This document shows, piece after piece, positions 1,140 to 62,220 of a DNA stretch of 64,000 nt (positions are counted from its first letter, which is position 1; the number at the start of each line of letters is the position of its first letter). The position numbers were made by a program, and so were the translations under genes. Source of the stretch: Octopus sinensis. Lineage: Eukaryota. The stretch covers positions 26,908,001 through 26,972,000 of the forward strand of contig NC_042998.1 of assembly GCF_006345805.1 (NCBI RefSeq), given 5' to 3'. The notes under the pieces were generated by a model that was not told where the DNA came from, searched no databases, and was given only the letters and a program-made list of their open reading frames with translations.

Positions 1140-1615
1140 GGTGTAGGAGCGGCTGTGTGGTAAGAAGCTTGTTTAGCAACCACATGATTCCAGGTTCAGT
1201 CCGACTGCATGGCACCTTGGGCAAGTGTCTTCTACTATAACCTCGGGCCAACCAAAGCCTTGTGAGTGAATTTGGTAGATGGGAATTGAAAGAAGCTCGT
1301 CGTATATATATGTATATATATGTGTGTGTGTATGTTTGTGTCTGTGTTTATCCCACCAAGCCTTGTGAGTCGATTTGGTAGATGGAAACTGAAAGAAGCC
1401 CATCGTATGTGTGTGTGTGTGTTTGTGTTGGTCCCCCCAACATCACTTGACAACCGATGCTGGTGTGTTTACGTCCCCATCACTTAGTGGTTCAGCAAAA
1501 GGGACCCAAAGAATAAGTACTAGGCTTACAAAGAATAAGTCCTGGGGTCGATTTGCTCAACTAAAGGCGGTGCTCCAGCATGGCCACAGTCAAATGACTG
1601 AAATATAAAAGAATA
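1140..1615 (+). mobile_element. tRNA-derived SINE family B (CORE-like), with internal ~100-bp duplication
   Basis: A-box-like tggtaag and B-box-like ggttcagtcc; CORE-like ggcaccttgggcaagtgtctt; internal TA/TG microsatellite; tail gactgaaa-ataaaagaat; the ccaaagccttgtgag module occurs twice (~1252, ~1357). Confidence 0.85.
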
Positions 1616-5117: not shown

Positions 5118-5333
5118 CGAGGGTTTGCTGAAATGTTCCTTGTTTTGGGTAAAAGAAAATAAAAGAGGATCAGTTAATTATGATTTTATTCAACATATTC
5201 CCCTCTCATATTCACATACTTATTGCAGAAATCCTTCAGTTTTTCTAAGCCCTATAAAAGAACTTGAATGGTTCAGCCTCCAACCAGGCCTTTTATGATA
5301 CCCTTAAAGCCAGGAGTTTTTCTGCACCCCTCA
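5118..5333. mobile_element. mariner-derived MITE
   Basis: TA-CGAGGG...-type TIRs at both ends; same family as 28113, 29135 and 29748. Confidence 0.7.
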
Positions 5334-5440
5334 CATATATATATATATATAAATATACACACATACAGGTAGGGCCAGATTAAGACACATGGAGGCCCTA
5401 AGGACTTAAAAGATTTTGGTACCCTCATATATAAGTAATT

Positions 5441-5570
5441 CAAGACAAAGACAGGTGTATAAAAAACAAGCAGGTGTATTAGTTTGACACTCAGGAAGGT
5501 GAGAAAGTCTTTTATGTTTCGTGCCTATGCTCTTCAACAGAAAGGAACATGAGGAAATAAACAGAGAGAA
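5441..5570 (-). mobile_element. Penelope-like terminus with degenerate minimal hammerhead (5509-5544)
   Basis: cuuu-CUGUUGA-a-gagc-auag-gcac-GAAAC-AUA-aaag; the downstream sequence matches the 34015-34390 repeat unit. Confidence 0.5.
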
Positions 5571-5898
5571 TTTTTAAAAAACTTGTGGATTTAGTAATTT
5601 CAAAAGTTTTTCCTACATTTTTTAATTGCAAAGTTTTTTTTATCAGATCCTCATTATGGCGCCATGAACACTGACGTATTTCCAATCATATAAACCACTT
5701 CAAATATTATTGTATCAAGTTGAAAGTGACTCCATTTGTGCTGCAAACCATTTACCATTTCTGTGGTGCCCTGCTTCCATTGCTGCCCTAAGAACATGCT
5801 TATTTTGCTTAATGGTTAATCCAGTGCTGTATAGAGGATACAAGGGGCTTTTGAGGACACTTATTTATTAATGTATTACTTCTTTCAAACCTTCAAAC

Positions 5899-6270
5899 CA
5901 GGTGCAGGAGTGGCTGTGTGGTAAGTAGCTTGCTTACCAACCACATGATTCTGGGTTCAGTCCCACTGCATGGCACCTTGGGCAAGTGTCTTCTACTATA
6001 GCCTCAGGCCGACCAAAGCCTTGTGAGTGGATTTGGTAGATGGAAACTGAAAGAAGCCCGTCGTATATGTGTGTGTGTTTGTGTGTCTGTGTTGGTCCCC
6101 CCAACATCACTTGACAACCAATGCTGGTGTGTTTGCGTCCCCATAACTTAGCGGTTTGGCAAAAGAGACCAATAGGCTTACAAAGAATAAGTCCTGGGAA
6201 CGATTTGCTCAACTAAAGGCAGTGCTCCAGCATGGCCACAGTCAAATGACTGAAACAAGTAAAATTAAAA
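5899..6270 (+). mobile_element. SINE family B, full length
   Basis: Colinear with the 1140-1615 copy. Confidence 0.88.
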
Positions 6271-6610
6271 AGTTTTTATGCCTTTCAGATCAGCTATGGC
6301 AGTTAAAATCCTAACACAAGAAATGAAAAGATATTCAGTCATTGTTACTGAACAGAGTAATTTCAAAAATGCCATCTAAACATCGGAGGATCATTTGCAT
6401 ACAAAGTTCAGATGGAATTTGGTTGAAATGTTTCAACTAAATCAAAGAGAAAAGAACATTCTAAGCATTTGGACACAATAAAAACAATGCAGTCTATTCA
6501 ATAGGTTCCAAATATTATTGATGACAATGCTGGTAAAAACCAATGAGACCCATCACTAAATAATTTCATGAGTCAGAGCAAAATAATATTCAGAGTGGTA
6601 TACATATGAT

Positions 6611-6844
6611 TAAGGCAGTAAACTGGCAGAATCATTAGCACGCCGGGCGAAATGCTTAGCGGTATTTCGTCTGCTGCTACGTTCTGAGTTCAAATTCTGC
6701 CGAGGTCGACTTTGCCTTTCATCCTTTCGGGGTCGATTAAATAAGTATCAGTTACGCACTGGAGTCGATGTAATCGACTTAATTCGTTTGTCTGTCCTTG
6801 TTTGTCCTCTCTGTGTTTAGCCCCTTGTGGGTAGTAAAGAAATA
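6611..6844 (+). mobile_element. SINE family A with 14-bp TSD
   Basis: ggtatacatatgat (6597-6610) vs ggtatatatatgat (6845-6858). Confidence 0.9.
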
Positions 6845-7369
6845 GGTATATATATGATCAGAAATATAATTTCAAAGTATTCATGGTGTCATAGTGAGGA
6901 TCTGATCAAAGACACACCAACTAAAAAAAAGTAAGAGAAAAGTTTTCAAATGTAGATAAAATATACAAAATATAGATAAAGTATACAAAACTAAACAGTA
7001 TTTCCCATTTTATTGTTAGTTTTGTTTCATTTATGAAAATAGAAATTTATCTTATGGTTTCTAATTATTTATATTATAAATTATGTATACATAGGGACAT
7101 AAAAATCTTTTAAGTGCTCAAGGCCTCTATGGGTATTAAACTACTGGCCCAGCCTATATATGAACTGGAGTTTATGAGGATATTCAGAACAATATCATAT
7201 GTACTGAAGAGAGGCTAATTTCATATCTGCAAAGACATGGGAATAGCATTTGATTCACGCCAAGTGGTTACTTAACAAGATTAAAAATCTCATGAACATG
7301 GTAAGCTTTGGTTTTCTCTAATGAAATCTTTGAACAACATCACAAGTCTAACAGAAGAAATAACAGAGG

Positions 7370-7867: not shown

Positions 7868-8812
7868 GAGGTGTGTGAGAAAGTGCCACCATCCCTAGCA
7901 GTTGAGGGAACCCGTGGAAGAGGTAGACCCAGGAAAACCTGGGACGAGGTGGTGAAGCACGACCTTCGGACGTTAGGTCTCACCATGGAATGTGACTAGG
8001 ACCGAGACCTATGGAAGTATGCTGTGCGTGAGAAGACCCGGCAAGACTAGTGAAGCCATAATCCATGGCCCCTACCTGGGACGTAGTCAGTCCACCTGTG
8101 CATACCTTCCTTCTTGTGACACTTGTGAAGACCTGTTGAGGCAAGTGAGAATCGAATCGAATCGTATCAAATCAAATCGAACCAAATCAAAATAGATGAA
8201 CATCAATGGAATTTGTATCCTTGTGGTACCAGTGCCGTGGCACATAAGAAAACCATCCGAACGTGACCGTAGCCAGTACCGCCAATGACTGGCCTCCGTG
8301 CTGAGGGCACGTAACAACCCATCCGAGCGTGGCCGTCCGCCAGCCTCGTCTAGCACCTGTGTCGGTGACACATAAGAAACACCATCCGAGCGTGGCCGTC
8401 TGCCAGCCTCGTCTGGCACCTGTGTCGGTGGCACATAAAAAACACCATCCGAGCGTGGTCCGTCTGCCAGCCTCGTCTGGCACCTGTGTCGGTGGCACAT
8501 AAAAAAACACCATCCGAGCGTGGCCGTCTCCAGCCTCGTCTGGCACCTGTGTCGGTGGCACATAAAAAACACCATCCGAGCGTGGCCGTCTGCCAGCCTC
8601 GTCTGGCACCTGTGTCGTGGCACATAAAATCACCCACTACACTCTCGGAGTGGTTGGCGTTAGGAAGGCATCCAGCTGTAGAAACACTGCCACATCTGAC
8701 TGGCCTGGTGCAGCCTTCGGGCTTCCCAGACCCCAGTTGAACTGTCCAACCCATGCTAGCATGGAAAGCGGACGTTAAACGATGATGATGATGAGATGAT
8801 GATGATATATAT
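7868..8812 (+). mobile_element. RTE-type LINE 3' fragment (ORF C-terminus, 3' UTR with tandem array, (GAT)n tail)
   Basis: GRGRPRKTWDEVVKHDLRTLGLT...DRDLWKYAVREKTRQD* (stop 8048-8050), an RTE C-terminal motif; tail ggcgttaggaaggcatcc...gttaaacgatgatgat. Confidence 0.85.
8232..8640 (+). repeat. tandem array, ~7 units of ~62 bp, within RTE 3' UTR
   Basis: Unit gtgtcggtggcacataaaaaacaccatccgagcgtggccgtctgccagcctcgtctggcacct. Confidence 0.95.
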
Positions 8813-12829: not shown

Positions 12830-13065
12830 GACTGGCGCCAAATGAAAAGCACTTGTGCTGGTACCACATAAAAACTAGTGATGCTGATGCCATGTAAAAA
12901 GTACCCAGTAACCTCTGTATGGTGGTTGGCATCAGGAGAGACAGTCAACTGCAGAAATCATGCCAAAACAGACACTGGAACCTGGTGCAACTTCTGGCCC
13001 TTGCCAGCTCCTGTCAGACCATGCAAACCAAGCCAGCATGAAAAAAAAATGATGTTAAATGATGA
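12830..13065 (+). mobile_element. diverged RTE-type 3' tail fragment
   Basis: Degenerate tail motif ending gttaaatgatgatg; similar old copies at ~24850-25045 and ~48665-48890. Confidence 0.65.
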
Positions 13066-13749: not shown

Positions 13750-13769
13750 ATTATTAATTAATAAATAAA

Positions 13770-14300
13770 TCATCATCATCATCATCATCATTTAGCGTCC
13801 GTTTTCCATGCTAGCATGGGTTGGACGGTTTAACTGGGGCCTGTGAAGCCGGAAGGCTTCATCAGGCCCAGTCAGATTTGGCAGTGTTTCTACGGCTGGA
13901 TGCCCTTCCTAACGCCAACCACTCTGCAAGTGTAGTGGGTGTTTTTTACGTGCCACCTGCACAGGTGCCAGACAGAGCTGGCACAACGGCCACGAATGGA
14001 TGGTGCTTTTACATGTCACCGGCACGGTGCCAGGCGATGCTGGCAACGGACACGAACGGATGGTGCTTTTACGTGCCACCGACACGGGGCCAGACAGAGC
14101 TGGCAAACAGCCACGAACGGACGGTGCTTTTACATCTCACTGGCACGGGGGCCAGCCGAGGCTGGCAACGGACACGAACGGATGGTGCTTTTACGTGCCA
14201 CCGACACGGGGGGCCAGACAGAGCTGGCAAACAGCCACGAGCGAATGGTGCTTTTACGTATCACCGACACGGGTGCCAGACGAGACTGGCAGCGGACACG
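13770..14300 (-). mobile_element. RTE-type 3' fragment with ~6-7 unit tandem array
   Basis: (CAT)n tail on the plus strand; array of the same subfamily as 37572-38130. Confidence 0.85.
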
Positions 14301-20646: not shown

Positions 20647-21060
20647 CATCATCATCATCATCGTCGTTTAACGTCCGTTCTCCATGCTAGCATGGGTTGG
20701 ACGGTTCGACCGGGGTTCTGGGAAGCCAGAAGGCTGCACCAGGCTCCAGTCTAATTTGGCAATGTTTCTACAGCTGGATGCCCTTCCTAACGCCAACCAC
20801 TCCGTGAGTGTAGTGGGTGCTTTTTACGTGCCACCTGCACAGGTGCCAGGCGGGGCTGGCAACGGCCACGGTCAGATTGGTGTATTTTATGTGCCACCGG
20901 CACGGAAGCCAGTCGAGGCGGTGCTGGCATCGGCCACGAGTCGGATAGTGCTTTTTACGTACCACCAGACCAGGGATCCTGGCTGGTTCAATTCGATTTC
21001 GATTTCGCTTGCCCCAACATGTCTTCACAAGCAAAGGGGGTTGGCAAGGGTGCCTGTCGT
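20646..21060 (-). mobile_element. RTE-type 3' fragment, young subfamily
   Basis: Nearly identical to 61415-61828. Confidence 0.85.
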
Positions 21061-24329: not shown

Positions 24330-25454
24330 TTATACATATATATAGATATTATACATATATATTTACACACATATATATATATCTCCACACACATACAGCA
24401 AAGACATAAAATCATTTCTATTTTAACGATAAAAAAAAATATGGTTCAATTTGTTTTTTTTTTCTTTTGCAGACCCATAGGATGAATACAACGATTACAA
24501 TGGAGTGTGTAGCATTGGTTATCTTTTGAATCCATGGGAAAAAAGTACAATGAAATGAGAAATATGTTTGAGAGGAAATTCAGTAAAGCAGGACTAACAG
24601 ATAAGTCATTGTGTGTAAAGCAGAAAACAAATCTAAATGAACTGTGTCTGTACATGACGAAAGGAGAAGTAGATGTCCAAGTATATCAGATTGTAATATG
24701 AATTCCATAAATTCTATCATTAAAGAAAATCCATATATACGCTTCATTGCATGGTAGCATGTAATCTCTATTTCCCAAAGACATTCTTTTACTTGTCTCA
24801 CTCATTGGACAGTGGCCATGTTGGGGCATGTCTGTGACAGTTAAGGGTCGTATCTATGCTAGTGCCATATAAAAAACACCTGTAGTGGTGCCATGTTAAA
24901 GTACTGGTGCAGGTGCTCTGTAAAATCACCAAGTACATTCTGTAAAGTGGTTGGTGTTAGGAATGGCACCCAGCTGTAGAAATCATGTCAAAACAGACAA
25001 TTGGAGCCTGGTGCAGCTCTCTGGCTTGTCAGCTCTTGTCAGACCAGCTTTACATTCTGAGTTCAAATTCTGGTGAGGCCAACTTTGCTGTTTATCTTTT
25101 CAGGGTCGATAGAGAACATTATCAATTGAGCATGTAACTAACTTCCCCTCCCCTCAAAATTGCTGGCCTTGTGCCAGCATGGAAAATGGAAATTAACTAA
25201 TGATGAGGAGGAAGAGGATGCTACAAAAAAGAGCTACCATTTACAGATGTTATATGATTCCTGAGATAATTAATACTACATGACCTTCTGAATGTCTCCT
25301 AAACATGTACAAGAAAATGGAAAATAAAACATAAATTGGGCCATTTATGTAACTTTTATGTTCATCCTGTACAAGCATTTTTCTGTTTTTCCTGTTTCTG
25401 ATGAACTGCTATGCTTGAAACATAAAGCAACAACTCTCGTGTTTCACCGAGTGT

Positions 25455-29219: not shown

Positions 29220-29457
29220 CAGGGGTGGGCAAACTTTTTTGATTGCGGGCCGCACAGTGCGTCTTTGGAATCTTGGCAGGCCTCATTTATAAAAATCAAG
29301 TGAAAATATTGTGAATTACCGTACAGTTACGAAGTATCTGCATAGAAGTTGGGATTCATAAAAGCTCTCGGCGGGCCGCATGAAAACCTATGGCGGGCCG
29401 CATGAAAACCTATGGCGGGCCGCATGCGGCCCGCGGGCCGTAGTTTGCCCACCCCTG
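29220..29457. mobile_element. hAT (Charlie-like) MITE
   Basis: TIR CAGGGGTGGGCAAACT; perfect 8-bp TSD atctaagg (29212-29219, 29458-29465); internal 22-bp tandem repeat. Confidence 0.93.
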
Positions 29458-29747: not shown

Positions 29748-30200
29748 CATGCAAGGGGGAACTAAAAAGTTCCTGGTTTTAAGGGTGTCATAATCTTCTA
29801 AGTTCTTTCACAGGGTATAGAAACAGTGAAGGATGCTGCTATAAGTGTGAATCTGAAAAGGGAATATCATCATTATCATCATCATCATTGTCGTCGTTTA
29901 ACATCCACTTTCCATGCTAGCATGGGTTGGATGATTTGACTGAGGTCTGGCGAACCAGATGGCTGCACCAGGCTCCATTTTGATCTGGCAGAGTTTCTAC
30001 AGTTGGATGCCCTTTCTAACGCCAACCACTTCAAGAGTGTAGTGGGTGCTTTTACGTGCCACCGGCACGAGGGCCAGTCAGACGGTACTGGCAACGGCCA
30101 CGCTCAAATGGTGCTTTTTGAATGTGTTGAATAAAATCACAACTGATTGGCCTCTATTTTCTCTGACCCAAAGCTAGGAACATGTCAGCACCCCCTCATA
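29748..30200. mobile_element. mariner MITE interrupted by an RTE 3' tail (29868-30119, minus)
   Basis: MITE halves are colinear across the insert; flanks gaatat / gaatgt. Confidence 0.7.
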
Positions 30201-37571: not shown

Positions 37572-38295
37572 ACCCATCCGTTCGTGTCCGCTGTCAGCCT
37601 CATCTGGCACCCGTGTCGGTGATACGTAAAAGCTCCATTCGCTCATGGCCGTTTGCCAGCTCTGCCTGGCCCCCGTGTCGGTGGCACGTAAAAGCACCAT
37701 CCGTTCGTGTTCGTTGCCAGCCTCGCCTGGGCCTGTGCCGGTGACACGTAAAAGCACCGTCCGTTCGTGGCCGTTTGCCAGCTCTGTCTGGCCCCGTGTC
37801 GGTGGCACGTAAAAGCACCATCCATTCGTGGCTGTTTGCCAGCTCTGTCTGGCCCCGTGTCGGTGGCACGTAAAAGCACCATCCGTTCGTGTCCGTTGCC
37901 AGCCTCGGCTGGCCCCCGTGCCGGTGACACGTAAAAAGCACCGTCCGTTCGTGGCCGTTTGCCAGCTCTGTCTGGCAACCGTGTCGGTGGCACGTAAAAG
38001 CACCATCCGTTCGTGTCCGTTGCCAGCATCGCCTGGCCCCGTGCCGGTGACACGTAAAAGCACCATCTGTTCGTGGCCGTTCACCAGCTCTGTCTGGCAC
38101 CTGTGCAGGTGGCACGTAAAAAACACCCACTACACTCGCGGAGTGGTTGGCGTTAGGAAGGGCATCCAGCCGTAGAAACACTGCCAGATCAGACTGGGCC
38201 TGACGAAGCCTTCCAGCTTCACAGACCCCAGTTGACCCGTCCAACCCATGCTAGCATGGAAAGCGGACGCTAAATGATGATGATGATGATGATGA
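37572..38295 (+). mobile_element. RTE-type 3' fragment with 9-unit ~60-bp tandem array (37572-38130)
   Basis: Nine gtg(c/t)cggtg(g/a)cacgtaaaagcacc-type units, then tail motif and (GAT)n. Confidence 0.9.
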
Positions 38296-38917
38296 TATAT
38301 ATATATATTTAAGCCACAATATATGGATTCAACTAATCTGGTGGTACTCATAAAAAGAGCTACTTAATGTATCATTCTACACCACATATACAATATAGTA
38401 TGATACAAAAGAAAAAAATAACTTTTATCATAGTATATTTCTCTATTTATAATCTTTGTGTATGTGTGTGTGCACGCGCATGTATTAGTCATTGGCTAAT
38501 ATTGTCTTTGTGACATTTATTCCTCATCACATAATTATCTCTGATTGTTCCTGCATTAAATATCTTAACACAGATTTCACAGACAGACAGAAAATTCTTT
38601 CATTTTCTAAGACTTAGTTCCACACAAATGTATCCTTTCAGCAATTCATTTTTCATCTACTTTTTTTCTCTAATCACTAAACCAGCAACAATTTAAAGTG
38701 TACCTATCTCCTCGAGTTACTTACTTATCCCAGTCTGAGACACCTTACATAGTTAATAGCAATTAAGAAATTGCAAATGGAAAAATTTGCCTCTTCATCA
38801 AATATAGAATATCATTTCTTGAACAACTCAATACTCTGACACCATTAATAAAAACGCAAAAACAAGAATAACTGTGCAGGAAGCATGTTTCATTATAAGC
38901 CTTGTTTTTATCACTGA

Positions 38918-48574: not shown

Positions 48575-50265
48575 CATATTACTCTACCTCTGGTATTTGA
48601 GTACTATTTGTCCCATCGATTCACATTTATGTGCTTACTTTGGTGTGTGAGTGTAAGTGTGTGTGTAAAGCACTAGTGCTGGTGCCATGTAGAAAGCACT
48701 GGTGATGGTGCCACATAAAAAGCACCCAGAACACACTGTAAAATGGTTGGCGTTAGGAAGGACATCGAGCAATAGAAACCAAACTATAACAGACTATGGA
48801 ATCTGGTGTAGTCCCTGGCCTTGCCAGCTCCTGTCAAACCATCTAATCCATGCCAGCATGGAAAATGGACATTAAATGATGATGATGGTATATACTTATA
48901 TGTAATAAAGTTGAAATAACTGTGATCAAATTTGACAGTCTCCAATGAAAACCCTCATCCCATTTATTGAATATCAATTACAACAGGGAAGAGCAGAAAG
49001 AAAAGACCAGTCCTTGGTAATTTTTCTCTCTTTTTTAAACAGGCGGATATGAGTGGTATGCTTTATCTAACCTCAGCCCTCTAATTTCACTGATTGGCTG
49101 ATATCACTGCCTTGAGCAGAAAGGATTTTTATGGTCTCGAAGTGCTTTATCTTTCATGTGACGTTATATGTTTGTCTATTTTAGGTGGCTTGGTTAATTT
49201 TATCTTACTTTTCACATATATCATTTTATAATACATTCTATGTGTATGTAATAAATACGTGTGTGTGTATATATATTCTATAAACAACACATTCCAAACT
49301 TTAATATTTTCCTGGTTGTGTTTTGGTTTTTTTTTTTTTTTGCTTTCTCTACTTGACTTAGTGGTTTATAAAAATTATTATGATCATTGAGTAATATAAA
49401 GGAAAAAATTGAACAAAAAAAAACCCAGATCCTTTACTATTCAAAGAACAACAATGACGATTTATGCATTGACTTTTCTGCATGACTCATAATAAAAAAA
49501 GTAGATATGGTGCTTTATTTATTATTTGTGTTTCTAGTGACTGGTAAAGTCATTCCTCTCTCCTTTACCTAGCTGAATTATTAGAAATTAAAGAATATCA
49601 ACTAAATATAAGATAAAATATTTAATTTATAGCCCTTTTTTTTCCAACCCTGGCAAGGTATATATATATATACATATATATATATAAAAAGAAGTCTTTA
49701 ACATGATATGGCTTATATGAAGTTAAATCAATTTTTCAAAACAAAATGAGGCTGTATATGAACAGACATGTACATTTGTAATGAATAAACTGCAATAACA
49801 TAACGGAAATTTTCAATAATGTTTTCGTGAAATGTTAAAAGAATTTATATTCTTAATTCATTCTGTAAACATGAATGTCTGCCTCTTAATGTGTGTCAAA
49901 AGTAGTATCCTGCATTCAGGAATTTCAAGCTGTATTCAGAGAAAATAAATTTACACCTAATTTCTGACCAATCCCATACTTTCAAGTCAAAGAAAACATC
50001 AATCAATTACAATAATTGGGGTGAACAGAAAGAAATTCTTTGAAAAAGGTACAGATATTATATTAAAAATATTAAGCTGGAATTGCTATCATTTTACAAT
50101 GTTTATATATATATACATTTTATTCATTATTTTGCACATTACTTAATCATTGTTATATGTTTTATCTTATATTTAATCTTTCTATAATATGTACTTTTTC
50201 TAAATGGTATAATTTAATTTTTCATTATTGAATTGATAAAAAGGTGTTTTTTTTTTCGAATTTAC

Positions 50266-52551: not shown

Positions 52552-53338
52552 CAGTAGTTTTCAGTCAGGTTCCATATGGCCTTTGGAGGGGGCCACATAA
52601 GATTCCATTGTTAAAATTTATCTGCAATAAATTGGCTATACTTCACAATACACAAAACGTTCTAGCATTTTGTTTTATACAATTTCTTATAATATTTAAT
52701 TACAAAAATATCTTTCCTTTTATCTTCTACTTGTTTCAGTCATTAGACTGCAGCCATACTGGGGCACTGCCTTACAGAATTTTTTAGTCAAATGAATCAA
52801 TCCCAAGACTTGTTTATTTATGTATTTAATTTTTTTTTTTTAAAGCTTGGAACTTATCCTATTGTCTCTTTTGCAGGACTGCTAGGATATGAGGCATAAA
52901 CACACACTAATACCAGTCGTCAAGTGTTGATGGGGGACAAATACACACACACACACACACACACACACAATGGGCTTCTTTCAGTTTCTGTCAACCAGAT
53001 CTACTCACAACGCTTTGGTTGGCCTGAGGCTATATTAGATGACACTTGCCCAAGGTGCCGTGCAGAACCATGTGGTTCCATGTGGTTGAGAAACAAGCTT
53101 CTTACCACACAGCCACACCTGTGCCTAAAAGGAAAAAAAAAGAAAATATGGAATGCTTCATGAATTTGTGTGTTGTCCATGTGCAGGGGCCATGCTAGTC
53201 TTCTCAATATCATTTCAATTTTAACATATGTATTGCCAAAGCAATAGGATCTTTTAAATATTAAATGGCTACGAGGGTCCACCTGAGTAAAACAGGAACG
53301 AAAGGGGTCCATAGGAAAAAAATGGTTGAGAACCAGTG
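52552..53338. mobile_element. hAT-type MITE with nested SINE B (~52720-53125, minus)
   Basis: Ends cagtagttttcagtc / ggttgagaaccagtg; flanks ctatagga / ccaaagga. Confidence 0.65.
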
Positions 53339-59349: not shown

Positions 59350-59892
59350 TTGAAACAGGATGGGTAGAGGTAGACCCAGGAAGACATGGGATGAAGTGGT
59401 CAAGCATGACCTTCAAATGTTGGGCCTCACAGAAGCAATGACAAAAGACCGAGACCTCTGGAGATATGCTGTGACTGCGAAAACCCGACAAATGAAGTGA
59501 GTTCATGGCTCGCAAGACAGCCTGCTGTGCTTACCTTGGATTGTAGGGTGACCTGCTGTGCTTGAGGAGACCTACTGAGTCAAGTACATCAACAACAAAA
59601 TAAAAATCAAATGGAAACTGTAGTTGTGGTACCCGTGCCAGTGGCATGTAAAAAGCACCATCCAAACGTGGCTGATGCCAGCGCCACCTTGACTGGCTTC
59701 TGTATTGGTGGCACGTAAAAAGCACCCACTACACTCAGAGCAGTTGGCATTAGGAAAGGCATTCAGCTGTAGAAACACTGCCAGATCAGACTGGAGCCTA
59801 GTGCAGCCTCCTGGCTTCCCAGACCCCGGTCAAACTGTCCAATCTATGCTAGCATGGAAAACGGATGTTAAACGATGATGATGATGATGATG
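59350..59892 (+). mobile_element. RTE-type LINE 3' fragment
   Basis: GRGRPRKTWDEVVKHDLQMLGLTEAMTKDRDLWRYAVTAKTRQMK* (59363-59500); two repeat units; (GAT)n tail. Confidence 0.88.
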
Positions 59893-60919: not shown

Positions 60920-61172
60920 TGCGCTGGTGGCACGTAAAAAGCACCAACCGATCGTGGCCATTGCCAGCCTCCCCTGGCACCTGTGCTGGTGGTACGTAAA
61001 AAGCACCCACTACACTCACGGAGTGGTTGGTGTTAAGAAGGGCATCCAGCTGTAGAAACACTGCCAGATCAGACTGGAGCCTGGTACAGCCTTCCTGGCT
61101 TCCCAAACCCCGGTTGAACCATCCAACCCATGCTAGCATGGAAAACGGACGTTAAACGATGATGATGATGAT
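60920..61172 (+). mobile_element. RTE-type 3' tail with two repeat units
   Basis: Tail motif plus (GAT)n. Confidence 0.8.
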
Positions 61173-61414: not shown

Positions 61415-62220
61415 CATCATCGTCATCATCGTCGTTTAACGTCCGTTCTCCATGCTAGCATGGGTTGGACGGTTCGACCGGGGTTCTGGGAAGCCAGAAG
61501 GCTGCACCAGGCTCCAGTCTAATTTGGCAATGTTTCTACAGCTGGATGCCCTTCCTAACGCCAACCACTCCGTGAGTGTAGTGGGTGCTTTTTACGTGCC
61601 ACCTGCACAGGTGCCAGGCGGGGCTGGCAACGGCCACGGTCAGATTGGTGTATTTTATGTGCCACCGCACGGAAGCCAGTCGAGGCGTGGTGCTGGCATC
61701 GGCCACGAGTCGGATAGTGCTTTTTACGTACCACCAGACCAGGGATCCTGGCTGGTTCAATTCGATTTCGATTTCGCTTGCCCCAACATGTCTTCACAAG
61801 CAAAGGGGGTTGGCATGGGTGCCTGTCGTACGGTCGCATTGGAGTATTTTACGTGCCACGGCCACGAGTCGGATAGTGCTTTTTACGTACCACCAGACCA
61901 GGGATCCTGGCTGGTTCAATTCGATTTCGATTTCGCTGCCCCAACATGTCTTCACAAGCAAGGGGGTGGCATGGGTGCCTGTCGTACGGTCGCATTGGAG
62001 TATTTTACGTGCCACGGCCACGAGTCGGATAGTGCTTTTTACGTACCACCAGGCCAGAGATCCTGGCTGGTTCAATTCGGTTTCGATTTCGATTTCGCTT
62101 GCCCCAACATGTCTTCGCAAGCATGGGGGGTTGGCATGGGTGTCTGTCGTCGGATGAGGTTCTATATCGACTTCGCTTGCCTCAGCCGGTCTTTGTGTCC
62201 AAGGGAGGAAAGGCATTCAT
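61415..62220 (-). mobile_element. RTE-type 3' fragment with three ~158-bp units, flanked by a 55-bp duplication
   Basis: gccacgagtcgg at 61702, 61861 and 62017; flanks 61353-61407 and 62235-62289. Confidence 0.88.

What the first reader, a model, noticed from the sequence alone, without database searches (positions are those of the whole stretch)
8232..8640. RTE 3' UTR tandem units each fit a compact H-type pseudoknot plus two hairpins
Seen: the array follows an RTE ORF stop (8050) and precedes the (GAT)n tail, so it lies in the 3' UTR. The conserved core of most units reads GUGC-N-GGUG-GCAC-(G/A)UAAAA(A)(G)-CACC. This gives stem 1 GUGC/GCAC, a 1-nt loop, stem 2 GGUG/CACC stacked with no linker, and an A-rich loop 3 (example 38103-38127). 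The 1-nt loop is C, A (38107) or U (45672). Stem 1 varies as C-G, U.G or U-A (8359-8371), with G.U at 60983-60995. Linkers carry CC(G/A)-NNCG-UGG and GCCAG/CUGGC hairpins with variable loops. Counter-evidence: some units have a C.A mismatch (gtgc/acac) and the 20940 and 61720 units lose stem 1. Known: this geometry is the classic H-type pseudoknot, and tobamovirus 3' UTRs use consecutive pseudoknots in place of a poly(A) tail. Inference: these LINEs, which end in (GAT)n, may use a copy-number-variable pseudoknot array for RNA stability, translation or RT recognition. I do not know of this being described.
Basis: partly seen in the sequence, partly recalled or inferred. Interest (0 to 1): 0.75.

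Follow-up and report, generated by a model that had tools for sequence, protein, structure and literature searches.

The report
Repeated motif in octopus LINE tail
A 63-base unit repeated about seven times near the end of an octopus jumping gene carries a short, strongly conserved motif that can be drawn as a tiny RNA pseudoknot, but the sequences I could reach support only a simple hairpin, so the pseudoknot remains an untested idea.

Summary
The array is real. TRF gives period 63, 4.9 copies at 95% identity, and two degenerate units lie upstream. It sits in the 3' UTR of a 5'-truncated RTE-like LINE copy (7871-8806). The core GUGY-N-GGUG-RCAC-RUAAAA-CACC occurs 32 times in the window against 0.05 expected by chance.

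Unit number varies from 1 to 13 between copies, so the array is a variable-number tandem repeat inside the element. The core looks selected. A LINE lineage whose ORF is only 71% identical keeps four near-identical cores between unalignable linkers. Cnidarian relatives have no long 3' UTR at all, only the terminal hairpin plus (GAT)n.

Only 59 of 117 units, and 4 of 7 in this array, have all eight proposed pairs.
- **Stem 1:** modest support, including an extra closing pair that varies C-G, U.G and U-A.
- **Stem 2 (GGUG:CACC):** this is the stem that makes the fold a pseudoknot. It shows no compensatory change, and every variant is one-sided.
- **Energy:** the pseudoknot is favoured or disfavoured depending on the parameter set.

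Verdict: a conserved multi-copy 3' UTR element. The hairpin is supported. The pseudoknot is possible but not shown. Function is unknown, and it is probably not the primary reverse-transcriptase entry site.

The parts
7871..8050 (+). C-terminal remnant of the LINE ORF (GRGRPRKTWDEVVKHDL...), stop at 8048-8050, internal stop at 7997. The copy is 5'-truncated at a (TA)n run.
   Evidence: Homologues of this peptide lie at the extreme C-terminus of Exo_endo_phos + RVT_1 proteins.
8051..8148 (+). Unique post-stop segment of the 3' UTR.
   Evidence: Partly shared with the copies at 20991-21031 and 61760-62121.
8149..8191 (+). (AATCR)n microsatellite inside the 3' UTR.
   Evidence: TRF 8149-8191; also present in L029.
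8232..8254 (+). Core of unit 1, the 'first-unit' type: GTGCC-GTG-GCAC-ATAAGAAA-ACC. One G of GGUG is missing and AACC replaces CACC.
   Evidence: The same first-unit type with GAACC occurs in L024 10299, L023 10459, L025 3044 and L029 7448.
8298..8320 (+). Core of unit 2, degenerate (GTGCTGAGGGCACGTAACAACCC).
8319..8629 (+). Regular tandem array, period 63, 4.9 copies, 95% identity.
8359..8383 (+). Core of unit 3: GTGTC GGTG ACAC ATAAGAAA CACC (U4-A10).
8422..8446 (+). Core of unit 4: GTGTCGGTGGCACATAAAAAACACC (U4.G10; all eight pairs possible).
8486..8511 (+). Core of unit 5, as unit 4 with one more A.
8549..8573 (+). Core of unit 6, as unit 4.
8612..8634 (+). Core of terminal unit 7: GTGTC-GTG-GCAC-ATAAAAT-CACC, with a 1-nt deletion in GGUG.
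8635..8780 (+). Unique tail shared by all family members. It includes the widely conserved block GGTTGGCGTTAGGAAGGCATCCAGC at about 8652-8678.
8744..8773 (+). Terminal stem-loop GUCC..CCAUG-CUAG-CAUGG..GGAC just before the 3' repeat. It is the probable reverse-transcriptase entry site.
   Evidence: all pairs kept in 15 families; nearly identical in Hydractinia L031 and in L032.
8781..8806 (+). (GAT)n 3' terminal repeat, followed by (AT)n of the target.

Best explanation
The array is a copy-number-variable tandem duplication. It has 7 units here and 1 to 13 in other copies. It lies inside the unusually long 3' UTR of an octopus RTE-like LINE family (RT + PHD-finger ORF, (GAT)n end) and of that family's short non-autonomous derivatives.

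Each unit carries a core of about 25 nt that is kept by selection in the active elements. The fold that the sequences support is a stem-loop of 5-6 bp: Y(-1)-GUGY paired with RCAC-R(14). It presents N-GGUG in its loop and is followed by an A-rich tract and CACC. Pairing of GGUG with CACC, which would make the H-type pseudoknot, is possible but not shown.

I infer that the cores act as a multivalent cis-acting RNA site. They would bind the element's own protein or a host RNA-binding protein and help the transcript through RNP assembly, stability or translation. I infer that they are not the primary reverse-transcriptase entry site. That site is the terminal hairpin plus (GAT)n.

I also infer that arrays grow and shrink by template switching or slippage during reverse transcription, or by unequal recombination between units, and that the exact number of units is not critical.

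Shown: anatomy, copy-number variation, conservation, and the partial pairing statistics. Inferred: the RNA-level function, the binding partner and the mechanism of expansion.
For: Anatomy and copy number:
- TRF array. At least 14 copies of the tail lie in 64 kb, with 1-9 units upstream. O. vulgaris loci have 2-13 units.
- Two independent insertions of one subfamily carry the same A/B unit order but 9 versus 6 units (37574-38121 and 13944-14300).
- Tandem periods of 26, 62, 124 and 156 nt all occur in this UTR.

Host element:
- L029 has an RVT_1 ORF, a 590-nt UTR with 4 units and the tail.
- Homologues of the C-terminal peptide end proteins that carry EN + RT domains.

Selection on the core:
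- L027 and the octopus copy L029 are 70.8% identical over 1297 nt of ORF (68-71% at the amino-acid level). In the 3' UTR only the cores and the tail align, and L027 has four cores GTGT(A/G)GGTG(G/A)CAC(G/A)TAAAA(A/T)CACC.
- The terminal core is as conserved as the tail across families.
- CpG decay is asymmetric and spares the conserved words. N5G6 reads TG 30 times against CA 7. Positions (-1,1) read TG 37 against CA 7. Positions (13,14) read CA 22 against TG 10.

Stem-loop:
- RNAalifold on 56 units predicts stem 1 plus the -1:14 pair, with loop NGGUG.
- Pair -1:14 reads CG 32, UG 20, UA 16, other 14. Fisher p = 0.002 on distinct sequences. This is stronger than the association with an unpaired control CpG.
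- Double-decayed units are TG/CA 19, against TG/TG 3, CA/TG 2 and CA/CA 2.

Not the primary RT site:
- Hydractinia L031 and L032, at about 50% protein identity, keep GTCCAACCCATGCTAGCATGGAAAACGGACGTTAA plus (GAT)n. Their ORF stop lies inside or next to it, and they have no units.
Against: - No experiment and no transcript data were available, so an RNA-level function is an inference.
- The units are related by descent (tandem copies, subfamilies). The Fisher and shuffle numbers therefore overstate independence. At the level of lineages the -1:14 signal is only suggestive.
- That signal could partly arise if G1 and C13 are constrained as sequence while the flanking CpG partners decay freely.
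- The 4:10 pair shows no association (U-A 4, U.G 14, C.A 9, C-G 58; p = 0.46).
- L027 comes from a metagenome contig of unknown host. Tail exchange between LINE lineages could make the 3' module younger than the ORF divergence suggests.
- Internal units with C.A mismatches and first units with AACC were present in active elements. Not every unit is therefore constrained.
Confidence: 0.55

Rival explanations
1. Each unit folds into a compact H-type pseudoknot: S1 GUGY/RCAC, L1 of 1 nt, S2 GGUG/CACC, and an A-rich L3 lying in the S1 minor groove. The array of pseudoknots works like a poly(A) substitute or a protective or recognition module.
For: - Both arms of S2 are among the best conserved positions. 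GGUG and CACC are each intact in about 85-90% of units. They are kept in all four L027 cores.
- The alternative upstream partner CACC is not conserved. Its A:U pair is present in only 36 of 82 units.
- RNAalifold on terminal unit plus tail picks GUG:CAC.
- In the 26-nt-unit families position 10 is C. S2 can then extend to GGUGC:GCACC while S1 shrinks.
- G6 is protected from CpG decay: TG 30 against CA 7.
- Loop and stem lengths pass the usual steric rules (PMC2853144).
- With DP09 parameters the pseudoknot scores -9.1 to -9.5 kcal/mol. Nested folds score -5.3 to -9.0 (parameters from PMC5886407).
Against: - S2 has no genuine compensatory change. G6>A (8 units) always faces C. AACC, GACC, CTCC and GGAG are all mismatches. 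The rest are wobble transitions.
- Paired cells are 86.9% against 85.8% after shuffling.
- With Dirks-Pierce parameters the pseudoknot scores only -1.4 to -1.8 kcal/mol, worse than the hairpin.
- Only 59 of 117 units have all 8 pairs.
- In 79 of 89 non-terminal units N5 is a pyrimidine that can pair with G9, which competes with S2.
- First units carry AACC in several independent insertions.
- Units are separated by 36-nt linkers and lie about 150 nt or more from the 3' end, unlike a terminal protective structure.
Confidence: 0.22
2. A neutral minisatellite. A stretch of 3' UTR that happens to be rich in short inverted words (GCACC/GGUGC) was duplicated by slippage. The cores look conserved only because the copies are young, are homogenised within arrays, or were exchanged between LINE lineages together with the tail.
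For: - Copy number varies freely from 1 to 13.
- Arrays with different periods exist in the same UTR.
- Mismatched units were propagated as A/B dimers.
- Deletions between the two TGGCAC direct repeats remove GUGC-N-GGUG in some copies (L024 10186, L025 20165).
- Cnidarian relatives do without any of it.
Against: - The cores are kept and the linkers lost between lineages with 29% ORF divergence.
- The core is retained in families with 71-80% tail identity and different unit lengths.
- CpG decay is asymmetric and spares the conserved words.
- The terminal unit is present in nearly every family.
Confidence: 0.15
3. The core acts as a sequence motif rather than through a fold of its own. One example is the palindromic GTG(G/C)CAC word or the GUAAAAAG tract as a binding site for a protein. 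An A-tract binding factor such as PABP is one candidate, acting on RNA or on DNA.
For: - UAAAA is nearly invariant although it is unpaired in every model.
- Position 10 switches G/C between families, which keeps the 7-mer GTGSCAC palindromic.
- No covariation is needed to explain the conservation.
Against: - The -1:14 and 4:10 variants (C-G, U.G, U-A) are easier to explain by a helix.
- No candidate protein was tested, and nothing in the tools bears on binding.
Confidence: 0.08

Closest known systems
Stringent-type LINE/SINE 3' recognition modules (eel UnaL2/UnaSINE1 type: conserved stem-loop plus short 3' repeat). Recalled from my own knowledge; reviewed in PMC3747384.
   Same: The LINE and its short derivatives share a 3' module that ends in a conserved stem-loop and a short tandem repeat. 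Here that is CCAUG-CUAG-CAUGG plus (GAT)n.
   Different: That role fits the terminal hairpin at 8744-8773, not the array. The array lies about 150 nt or more upstream, is repeated, and is absent from distant relatives.
R2 retrotransposon 3' UTR pseudoknotted RNA bound by the R2 protein (PMC12222951, PMC11601368; listed).
   Same: A non-LTR retrotransposon 3' UTR in which a pseudoknot-containing fold is recognised by the element's own protein.
   Different: R2 has one complex, experimentally solved fold. Here there is a repeated 25-nt motif with no structural data, no sequence similarity and no Rfam match.
Tobamovirus upstream pseudoknot domain: consecutive small pseudoknots before the 3' tRNA-like end (named in PMC2853144).
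   Same: Several small H-type pseudoknot candidates in a row in the 3' UTR of an RNA that lacks poly(A).
   Different: Those pseudoknots abut each other and the terminal structure, are fixed in number and are experimentally supported. These units are spaced by 36-nt linkers, vary in number and are unproven. The resemblance is by analogy only.
Tandem repeats inside retroelements (SVA VNTR; repeat-rich RTE 3' UTRs). RTE-2_OV of Octopus vulgaris was reported to have a 3' UTR of about 600 nt, most of it 'a microsatellite' (PMC9115989).
   Same: A repeat array inside the 3' part of a retrotransposon, with variable copy number. The L029 UTR length of about 590 nt matches the RTE-2_OV description.
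   Different: The published description gives no unit sequence or motif. No paper in the searched library prints the core or the tail strings.
Minimal luteovirus-type H-type pseudoknots with an A-rich loop 3 in the stem 1 minor groove (BWYV; cited in PMC2853144).
   Same: Stems of 3-5 bp, a very short L1, no interhelix loop and an A-rich L3 of 6-8 nt.
   Different: Those are frameshift signals inside ORFs with solved structures. Here the context is a UTR, and L1 = 1 nt over a 4-bp stem 2 is at the tight end of what is known. That last point is my own judgement.

Membership tests
H-type RNA pseudoknot | Two helices of at least 3 bp with crossing topology can be drawn. | tested here: met
   S1 1-4:10-13 and S2 6-9:CACC. 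Both are complete in 59 of 117 units, S1 in 74 and S2 in 82. In this array both are complete in 4 of 7 units.
H-type RNA pseudoknot | Loop lengths are sterically allowed (L1 at least 1 nt, L3 at least 2 nt, L2 may be 0). | tested here: met
   L1 = 1, L2 = 0, L3 = 6-8 nt. Criteria as used by DotKnot (PMC2853144). L1 = 1 nt over a 4-bp stem is tight; that is my own judgement.
H-type RNA pseudoknot | Covariation supports stem 1. | tested here: inconclusive
   Pair 4:10 reads CG 46, UG 13, UA 4, unpaired 17, with no association (p = 0.46). The extra pair -1:14 reads CG 32, UG 20, UA 16 with p = 0.002 on non-independent sequences.
H-type RNA pseudoknot | Covariation supports stem 2, the pseudoknot-forming stem. 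| tested here: not met
   No genuine double change was seen. All variants are one-sided, either wobble or mismatch. L026 and L027 add none. Power is low because both arms are almost invariant.
H-type RNA pseudoknot | The pseudoknot is more stable than the competing nested folds. | tested here: inconclusive
   DP09 gives -9.1 to -9.5 kcal/mol and Dirks-Pierce gives -1.4 to -1.8. Nested minimum free energy is -5.3 to -9.0.
H-type RNA pseudoknot | Structure probing or mutate-and-rescue evidence exists. | not testable with these tools
   No experimental data were available.
RTE-clade LINE (3' UTR of) | A single ORF with APE-type endonuclease and reverse transcriptase lies upstream. | tested here: inconclusive
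   The window copy keeps only the last 60 codons or so. The related octopus copy L029 has an RVT_1 ORF directly upstream of the same UTR. Homologues of the C-terminal peptide end proteins with Exo_endo_phos + RVT_1 (P0112), or with RVT_1 alone or RVT_1 + PHD.
RTE-clade LINE (3' UTR of) | The 3' end is made of a short tandem repeat, not poly(A). | tested here: met
   (GAT)n ends all copies.
RTE-clade LINE (3' UTR of) | The 3' UTR is very short. This feature of the clade is recalled from Malik and Eickbush 1998, which is cited in PMC9115989. | tested here: not met
   The octopus UTR is about 590-750 nt. The feature is met in relatives L031 and L032, where the ORF runs into the terminal hairpin.
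RTE-clade LINE (3' UTR of) | The RT domain is placed inside the RTE clade by phylogeny. | not tested
No reference RT set was available.
Variable-number tandem repeat inside a transposable element | Copies lie head to tail, and copy number differs between insertions of one subfamily. | tested here: met
   TRF. The same A/B subfamily has 9 versus 6 units. The range is 1-13 units across loci.
Tobamovirus-like upstream pseudoknot domain | Consecutive pseudoknots abut each other and the 3' terminal structure, and they substitute for poly(A). | tested here: not met
   Units are separated by 36-nt linkers and by about 150 nt or more from the 3' end. Function cannot be tested here, and there is no homology.

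The most novel reading that the evidence does not exclude
A cephalopod branch of an ancient RTE-like LINE family inserted a module between its ORF and its terminal RT-recognition hairpin. The module is made of repeated minimal H-type pseudoknots: 4+4 bp, a 1-nt L1 and an A-rich L3. The number of pseudoknots is free to vary. Together they act as a multivalent element that replaces a poly(A) tail in stability, translation or RNP assembly. This would be a tobamovirus-like solution arising independently in an animal retrotransposon.
Probability: 0.18. Interest if true: 0.7.

Novelty: new variant of a known kind. Interest (0 to 1): 0.4.

Why it matters
RTE-type LINEs and their SINE-like derivatives make up a large share of octopus genomes, and some are expressed in the octopus brain (PMC9115989, PMC13282606). 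How LINEs without poly(A) keep their RNA stable, translated and bound in cis is poorly understood.

Here a short element is kept in several copies across LINE lineages that differ by 30% in their ORF. It is missing from cnidarian relatives, which make do with a 45-nt terminal hairpin. That makes it a defined and easily mutated candidate for such a function. If the pseudoknot fold were confirmed, it would be an unusual example of a copy-number-variable RNA structure array. If not, the finding is an ordinary repeat array inside a transposable element, with a conserved hairpin motif.

Tried and rejected
- **Rfam and tRNA scans:** Rfam at gathering thresholds over the whole window, and at E up to 10 over 7870-8810, found nothing in the element. 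ARAGORN found no tRNA-like part.
- **Collection scans with the tail pattern:** the viral contig scan gave 0 hits. The metagenome scan gave 22 contigs that share only the 25-nt block GTTGGCGTTAGGAAGGGCATCCAGC, none with the core upstream.
- **The 842-aa product next to an element in L025:** it is not an RT, with no Pfam hit. No RT ORF exists in the window or in L023-L025.
- **Other look-ups:** P0218 is not on record. L028 has a different 3' UTR and L030 has none.
- **Alternative upstream hairpin CACC:GGUG:** rejected as a conserved feature. 76% of cells pair, and its A:U pair is present in only 36 of 82 units. It is the minimum-free-energy fold of terminal units with N5 = A.
- **The two linker hairpins, GCCAG:CUGGC and UGGC:GCCA:** they exclude each other, yet both score 92-95% paired with no excess over shuffles. 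High pair percentages therefore do not discriminate between folds here.
- **z-scores:** folding energies of single units are not better than shuffles (z from -1.65 to +1.3). The whole array has z = -2.3, as expected for any tandem repeat with inverted words.
- **Literature search for the exact core and tail strings:** no paper prints them.
- **CpG decay as an explanation of the -1:14 association:** partly controlled with a third CpG. Not fully excluded.
Full report
**What is at the coordinates.**
- The window is AT-rich eukaryotic DNA full of (TA)n runs.
- A 5'-truncated LINE copy lies at 7871-8806. It starts at a (TA)n run with the last 60 codons or so of an ORF (...GRGRPRKTWDEVVKHDL...REKTRQD). 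The stop is at 8048-8050, and there is an internal stop at 7997.
- Then come a unique segment, an (AATCR)n microsatellite (8149-8191) and seven units of 61-66 nt.
- After the units come a unique tail of about 150 nt (8635-8780) and (GAT)n (8781-8806).
- TRF reports the regular part of the array as 8319-8629: period 63, 4.9 copies, 95% matches. Two older, degenerate units lie at 8232-8318.
It is separated from (GAT)n by a unique tail.

**Is it more than chance?**
- The pattern GTGYNGGTGRCACRTAAAA with up to 2 mismatches occurs 32 times in the window. Dinucleotide shuffles give 0.05.
- The unique tail occurs at least 14 times in the 64 kb, with 1 to 9 units upstream.
- A search with an antisense ORF across the array found only Octopus vulgaris 'hypothetical proteins'.
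- Three 20-kb stretches of that genome (L023-L025) hold 19 more tails. Their arrays have 2 to 13 units.
- The window therefore comes from an octopus or a close relative. I did not identify the species.

**What the host element is.**
- Neither the window nor L023-L025 contains an RT ORF.
- A full HMMER scan with the intact 46-aa C-terminus from 59360-59497 gave 256 hits. Many lie at the very end of longer proteins.
- Those longer proteins carry Exo_endo_phos + RVT_1 (P0112), RVT_1 alone (P0136) or RVT_1 + PHD (P0070).
- A search with one such fragment (P0008) led to O. vulgaris locus L029. There RVT_1-coding frames (5249-7240) are followed by a 3' UTR of about 590 nt with the (AATCR)n run, four units, the tail and (GAT)n.
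- This fits the published description of RTE-2_OV: a 3' UTR of about 600 nt, 'most of it a microsatellite' (PMC9115989). Identity with RTE-2_OV could not be tested.
- I did not do an RT phylogeny. 'RTE-like' rests on the 3' short repeat, the C-terminal motif and the domain content.

**The array is a variable-number repeat.**
- Two insertions with different flanks and different 5' truncation points (37574-38296 and 13769-14300) belong to one subfamily. They share the same order of unit types: a first unit with GAUAC, then alternating A (GUGUC..GGCAC) and B (GUGCC..GACAC) units. One has 9 units and the other 6.
- L025 16169-16936 has 13 units. The copy at 59635-59720, which still has the ORF end, has two.
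- The same UTR also shows a 124-nt dimer period and a 156-nt higher-order repeat that includes the post-stop segment (61700-62150). Related families have 26-nt units.
- Tandem duplication is thus a general habit of this UTR.

**The core is conserved beyond neutral expectation.**
- L027 is a metagenome contig of unknown host. It carries a related LINE whose ORF is 70.8% identical in DNA over 1297 nt, and 68-71% in protein, to the octopus copy L029.
- In the 3' UTR only the cores and the terminal unit plus tail align.
- L027 nevertheless has four cores, GTGT(A/G)GGTG(G/A)CAC(G/A)TAAAA(A/T)CACC, separated by linkers unrelated to the octopus ones.
- Within the octopus families the terminal core is as conserved as the tail, about 90% per column. 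Linker loops and N5 are not.
- CpG decay is asymmetric in a way that spares the conserved words. N5G6 became TG 30 times and CA 7 times. The CpG at (-1,1) became TG 37 times and CA 7 times. The CpG at (13,14) became CA 22 times and TG 10 times.
- A pure strand bias would favour the same kind of change at all three sites.

**What the array is probably not.**
- Relatives at about 50% protein identity have no long 3' UTR. These are Hydractinia symbiolongicarpus (L031) and another contig (L032).
- Their ORF runs into GTCCAACCCATGCTAGCATGGAAAACGGACGTTAA followed by (GAT)n.
- That is almost letter for letter the terminal hairpin of the octopus element (8744-8773). All pairs of this hairpin are kept across 15 octopus family representatives.
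- This hairpin plus the repeat is therefore the ancient module and the likely RT entry site. That matches stringent-type LINEs, which I recall from my own knowledge (review PMC3747384).
- The units are a lineage-specific addition upstream of it.

**Testing the pseudoknot: counts.**
- I aligned 83 distinct cores (A1) and counted the proposed pairs. 86.9% of cells pair, against 85.8% after shuffling. There are 11 double-changed cells against 5.9 expected.
- The excess is small. The tool's own caveat is that related sequences can give such values without any structure.
- **Stem 2.** This is the stem that makes the fold a pseudoknot, and none of its double changes is genuine. They come from misaligned or degenerate rows.
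  - Real stem 2 variants are all one-sided.
  - G6>A occurs in 8 units and always faces C.
  - The first-unit type has AACC in several independent insertions.
  - GACC, CUCC and GGAG are mismatches.
  - CACU and UACC are wobble transitions.
  - The share of single changes that keep pairing is about one third, which is what transitions alone would give.
- **Stem 1.**
  - The variable pair 4:10 reads C-G 58, U.G 14, C.A 9, U-A 4, with no association (p = 0.46).
  - The B units with C.A were part of active arrays.
  - T(-1) and A14 are associated (Fisher p = 0.002 on distinct sequences). The association is stronger than with an unpaired control CpG. It recurs in L026, L027 and L029.
  - Units in which both CpGs decayed are TG/CA 19 times. 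The other three combinations occur 2-3 times each.
  - The sequences are not independent, so I call this modest support for stem 1.
- **Predicted consensus folds.**
  - RNAalifold on 56 full units predicts exactly this 5-bp stem with the loop N-GGUG.
  - On terminal unit plus tail it instead picks GUG:CAC of stem 2 next to CCACU:AGUGG. Its covariation term there is zero.
- **Rival partners.**
  - The upstream CACC is not conserved.
  - N5 is a pyrimidine in 79 of 89 non-terminal units. It can extend stem 1 to G9 and so compete with stem 2.
  - In L027 and in most terminal units N5 is a purine.

**Testing the pseudoknot: energy and sterics.**
- Stems of 4+4 bp with L1 = 1, L2 = 0 and L3 = 6-8 pass the usual rules (PMC2853144).
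- I used pseudoknot parameters from PMC5886407, Table 1. The pseudoknot scores -9.1 to -9.5 kcal/mol (DP09) or -1.4 to -1.8 (Dirks-Pierce).
- The best nested fold of the same 30-mers scores -5.3 to -9.0.
- The choice of parameter set decides the outcome, so energy does not settle it.

**Conclusion.**
- The pseudoknot itself is neither supported nor excluded. The part with some support is a stem-loop presenting GGUG, followed by an A-rich tract and CACC.
- My best explanation is a selected, multi-copy cis-acting RNA element in a lineage-specific expansion of the 3' UTR. Its copy number drifts by slippage or template switching. It works upstream of, and in addition to, the ancient terminal hairpin.
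- The pseudoknot reading gets about 0.2.
- Nothing like this array is printed in the searched literature. Repeat-rich RTE 3' UTRs and pseudoknotted LINE 3' UTRs (R2) are both known, so I file it as a new variant of a known kind.

Noticed in passing
window 53142-53247 (-): A full-length U6 spliceosomal RNA gene (Rfam RF00026, 78.6 bits, E = 2.8e-18).
   Followed up: no
window 8652-8678, 38143-38170 and the other tails; L001-L022: The block GTTGGCGTTAGGAAGGGCATCCAGC(T/C)GTA(G)AAA of the tail also occurs in 22 metagenome contigs with otherwise unrelated flanks. It looks like a widely shared SINE/LINE conserved domain. I could not match it to a named domain (Ceph, Nin-DC, CORE).
   Followed up: partly
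window 8744-8806; L031 3876-3940; L032 2470-2530: The terminal hairpin GUCCAACCCAUG-CUAG-CAUGGAAARCGGAC plus (GAT)n is almost identical between octopus copies and LINE relatives from Hydractinia symbiolongicarpus and another contig. Those relatives are at about 50% protein identity, and their ORF stop lies inside or next to the hairpin. This points to deep conservation or horizontal transfer of this LINE family.
   Followed up: partly
window 7910-7930 and 59363-59385 (ORF C-terminus); insertion flanks: The C-terminal GRGRPRK motif scores as an AT-hook (Pfam 18.0 bits, cutoff 17.4). In 7 of 32 insertions (GAT)n is followed directly by (TA)n of 4 or more repeats, against 13% of random 80-nt windows. 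This may reflect a target preference for TA repeats, or microsatellite seeding by the element.
   Followed up: partly
window 61700-62150 (-): A 156-bp higher-order tandem repeat (2.8 copies, 94%). It is made of the post-stop UTR segment, (AATCG)n, a head unit without stem 1 (GGUCUGGUGGUAC) and a partial unit.
   Followed up: partly
window 12853-12899, 24856-24925, 48667-48725: Related short elements have 26-nt units (GCACU-N-GUGM-U-GGUGCCAC-AUAAAAA). Position 10 is C, so stem 1 loses a pair and GGUGC:GCACC gains one. Their tails are only about 71-75% identical to the main family.
   Followed up: partly
L024 10186-10253 (-), L025 20165-20232 (-), L026 about 215-235: Some copies have lost GUGC-N-GGUG of the terminal unit. 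The loss looks like a deletion between the two TGGCAC direct repeats.
   Followed up: no
window 1467-1484 (-); L023 2348 and 11757; L024 13885; L025 5158 and 7806: Another abundant repeat carries AAGTGACGGGGACGTAAACACACCAGCATCGG. Its GACGTAAACACACC resembles the 3' half of the core.
   Followed up: no
window 29370-29426: A perfect 22-bp tandem repeat, GGCGGGCCGCATGAAAACCTAT, 2.6 copies, next to an element tail at 29875-30048.
   Followed up: no
L028 1080-1140: A related LINE (P0008, 73% identical to the window's C-terminal peptide) has a different 3' UTR. Its motif is GUGUCGGUGUGUCACGACACAUUAAAAUAACC: the same start as the core but with an inserted UGUCAC and AACC.
   Followed up: no
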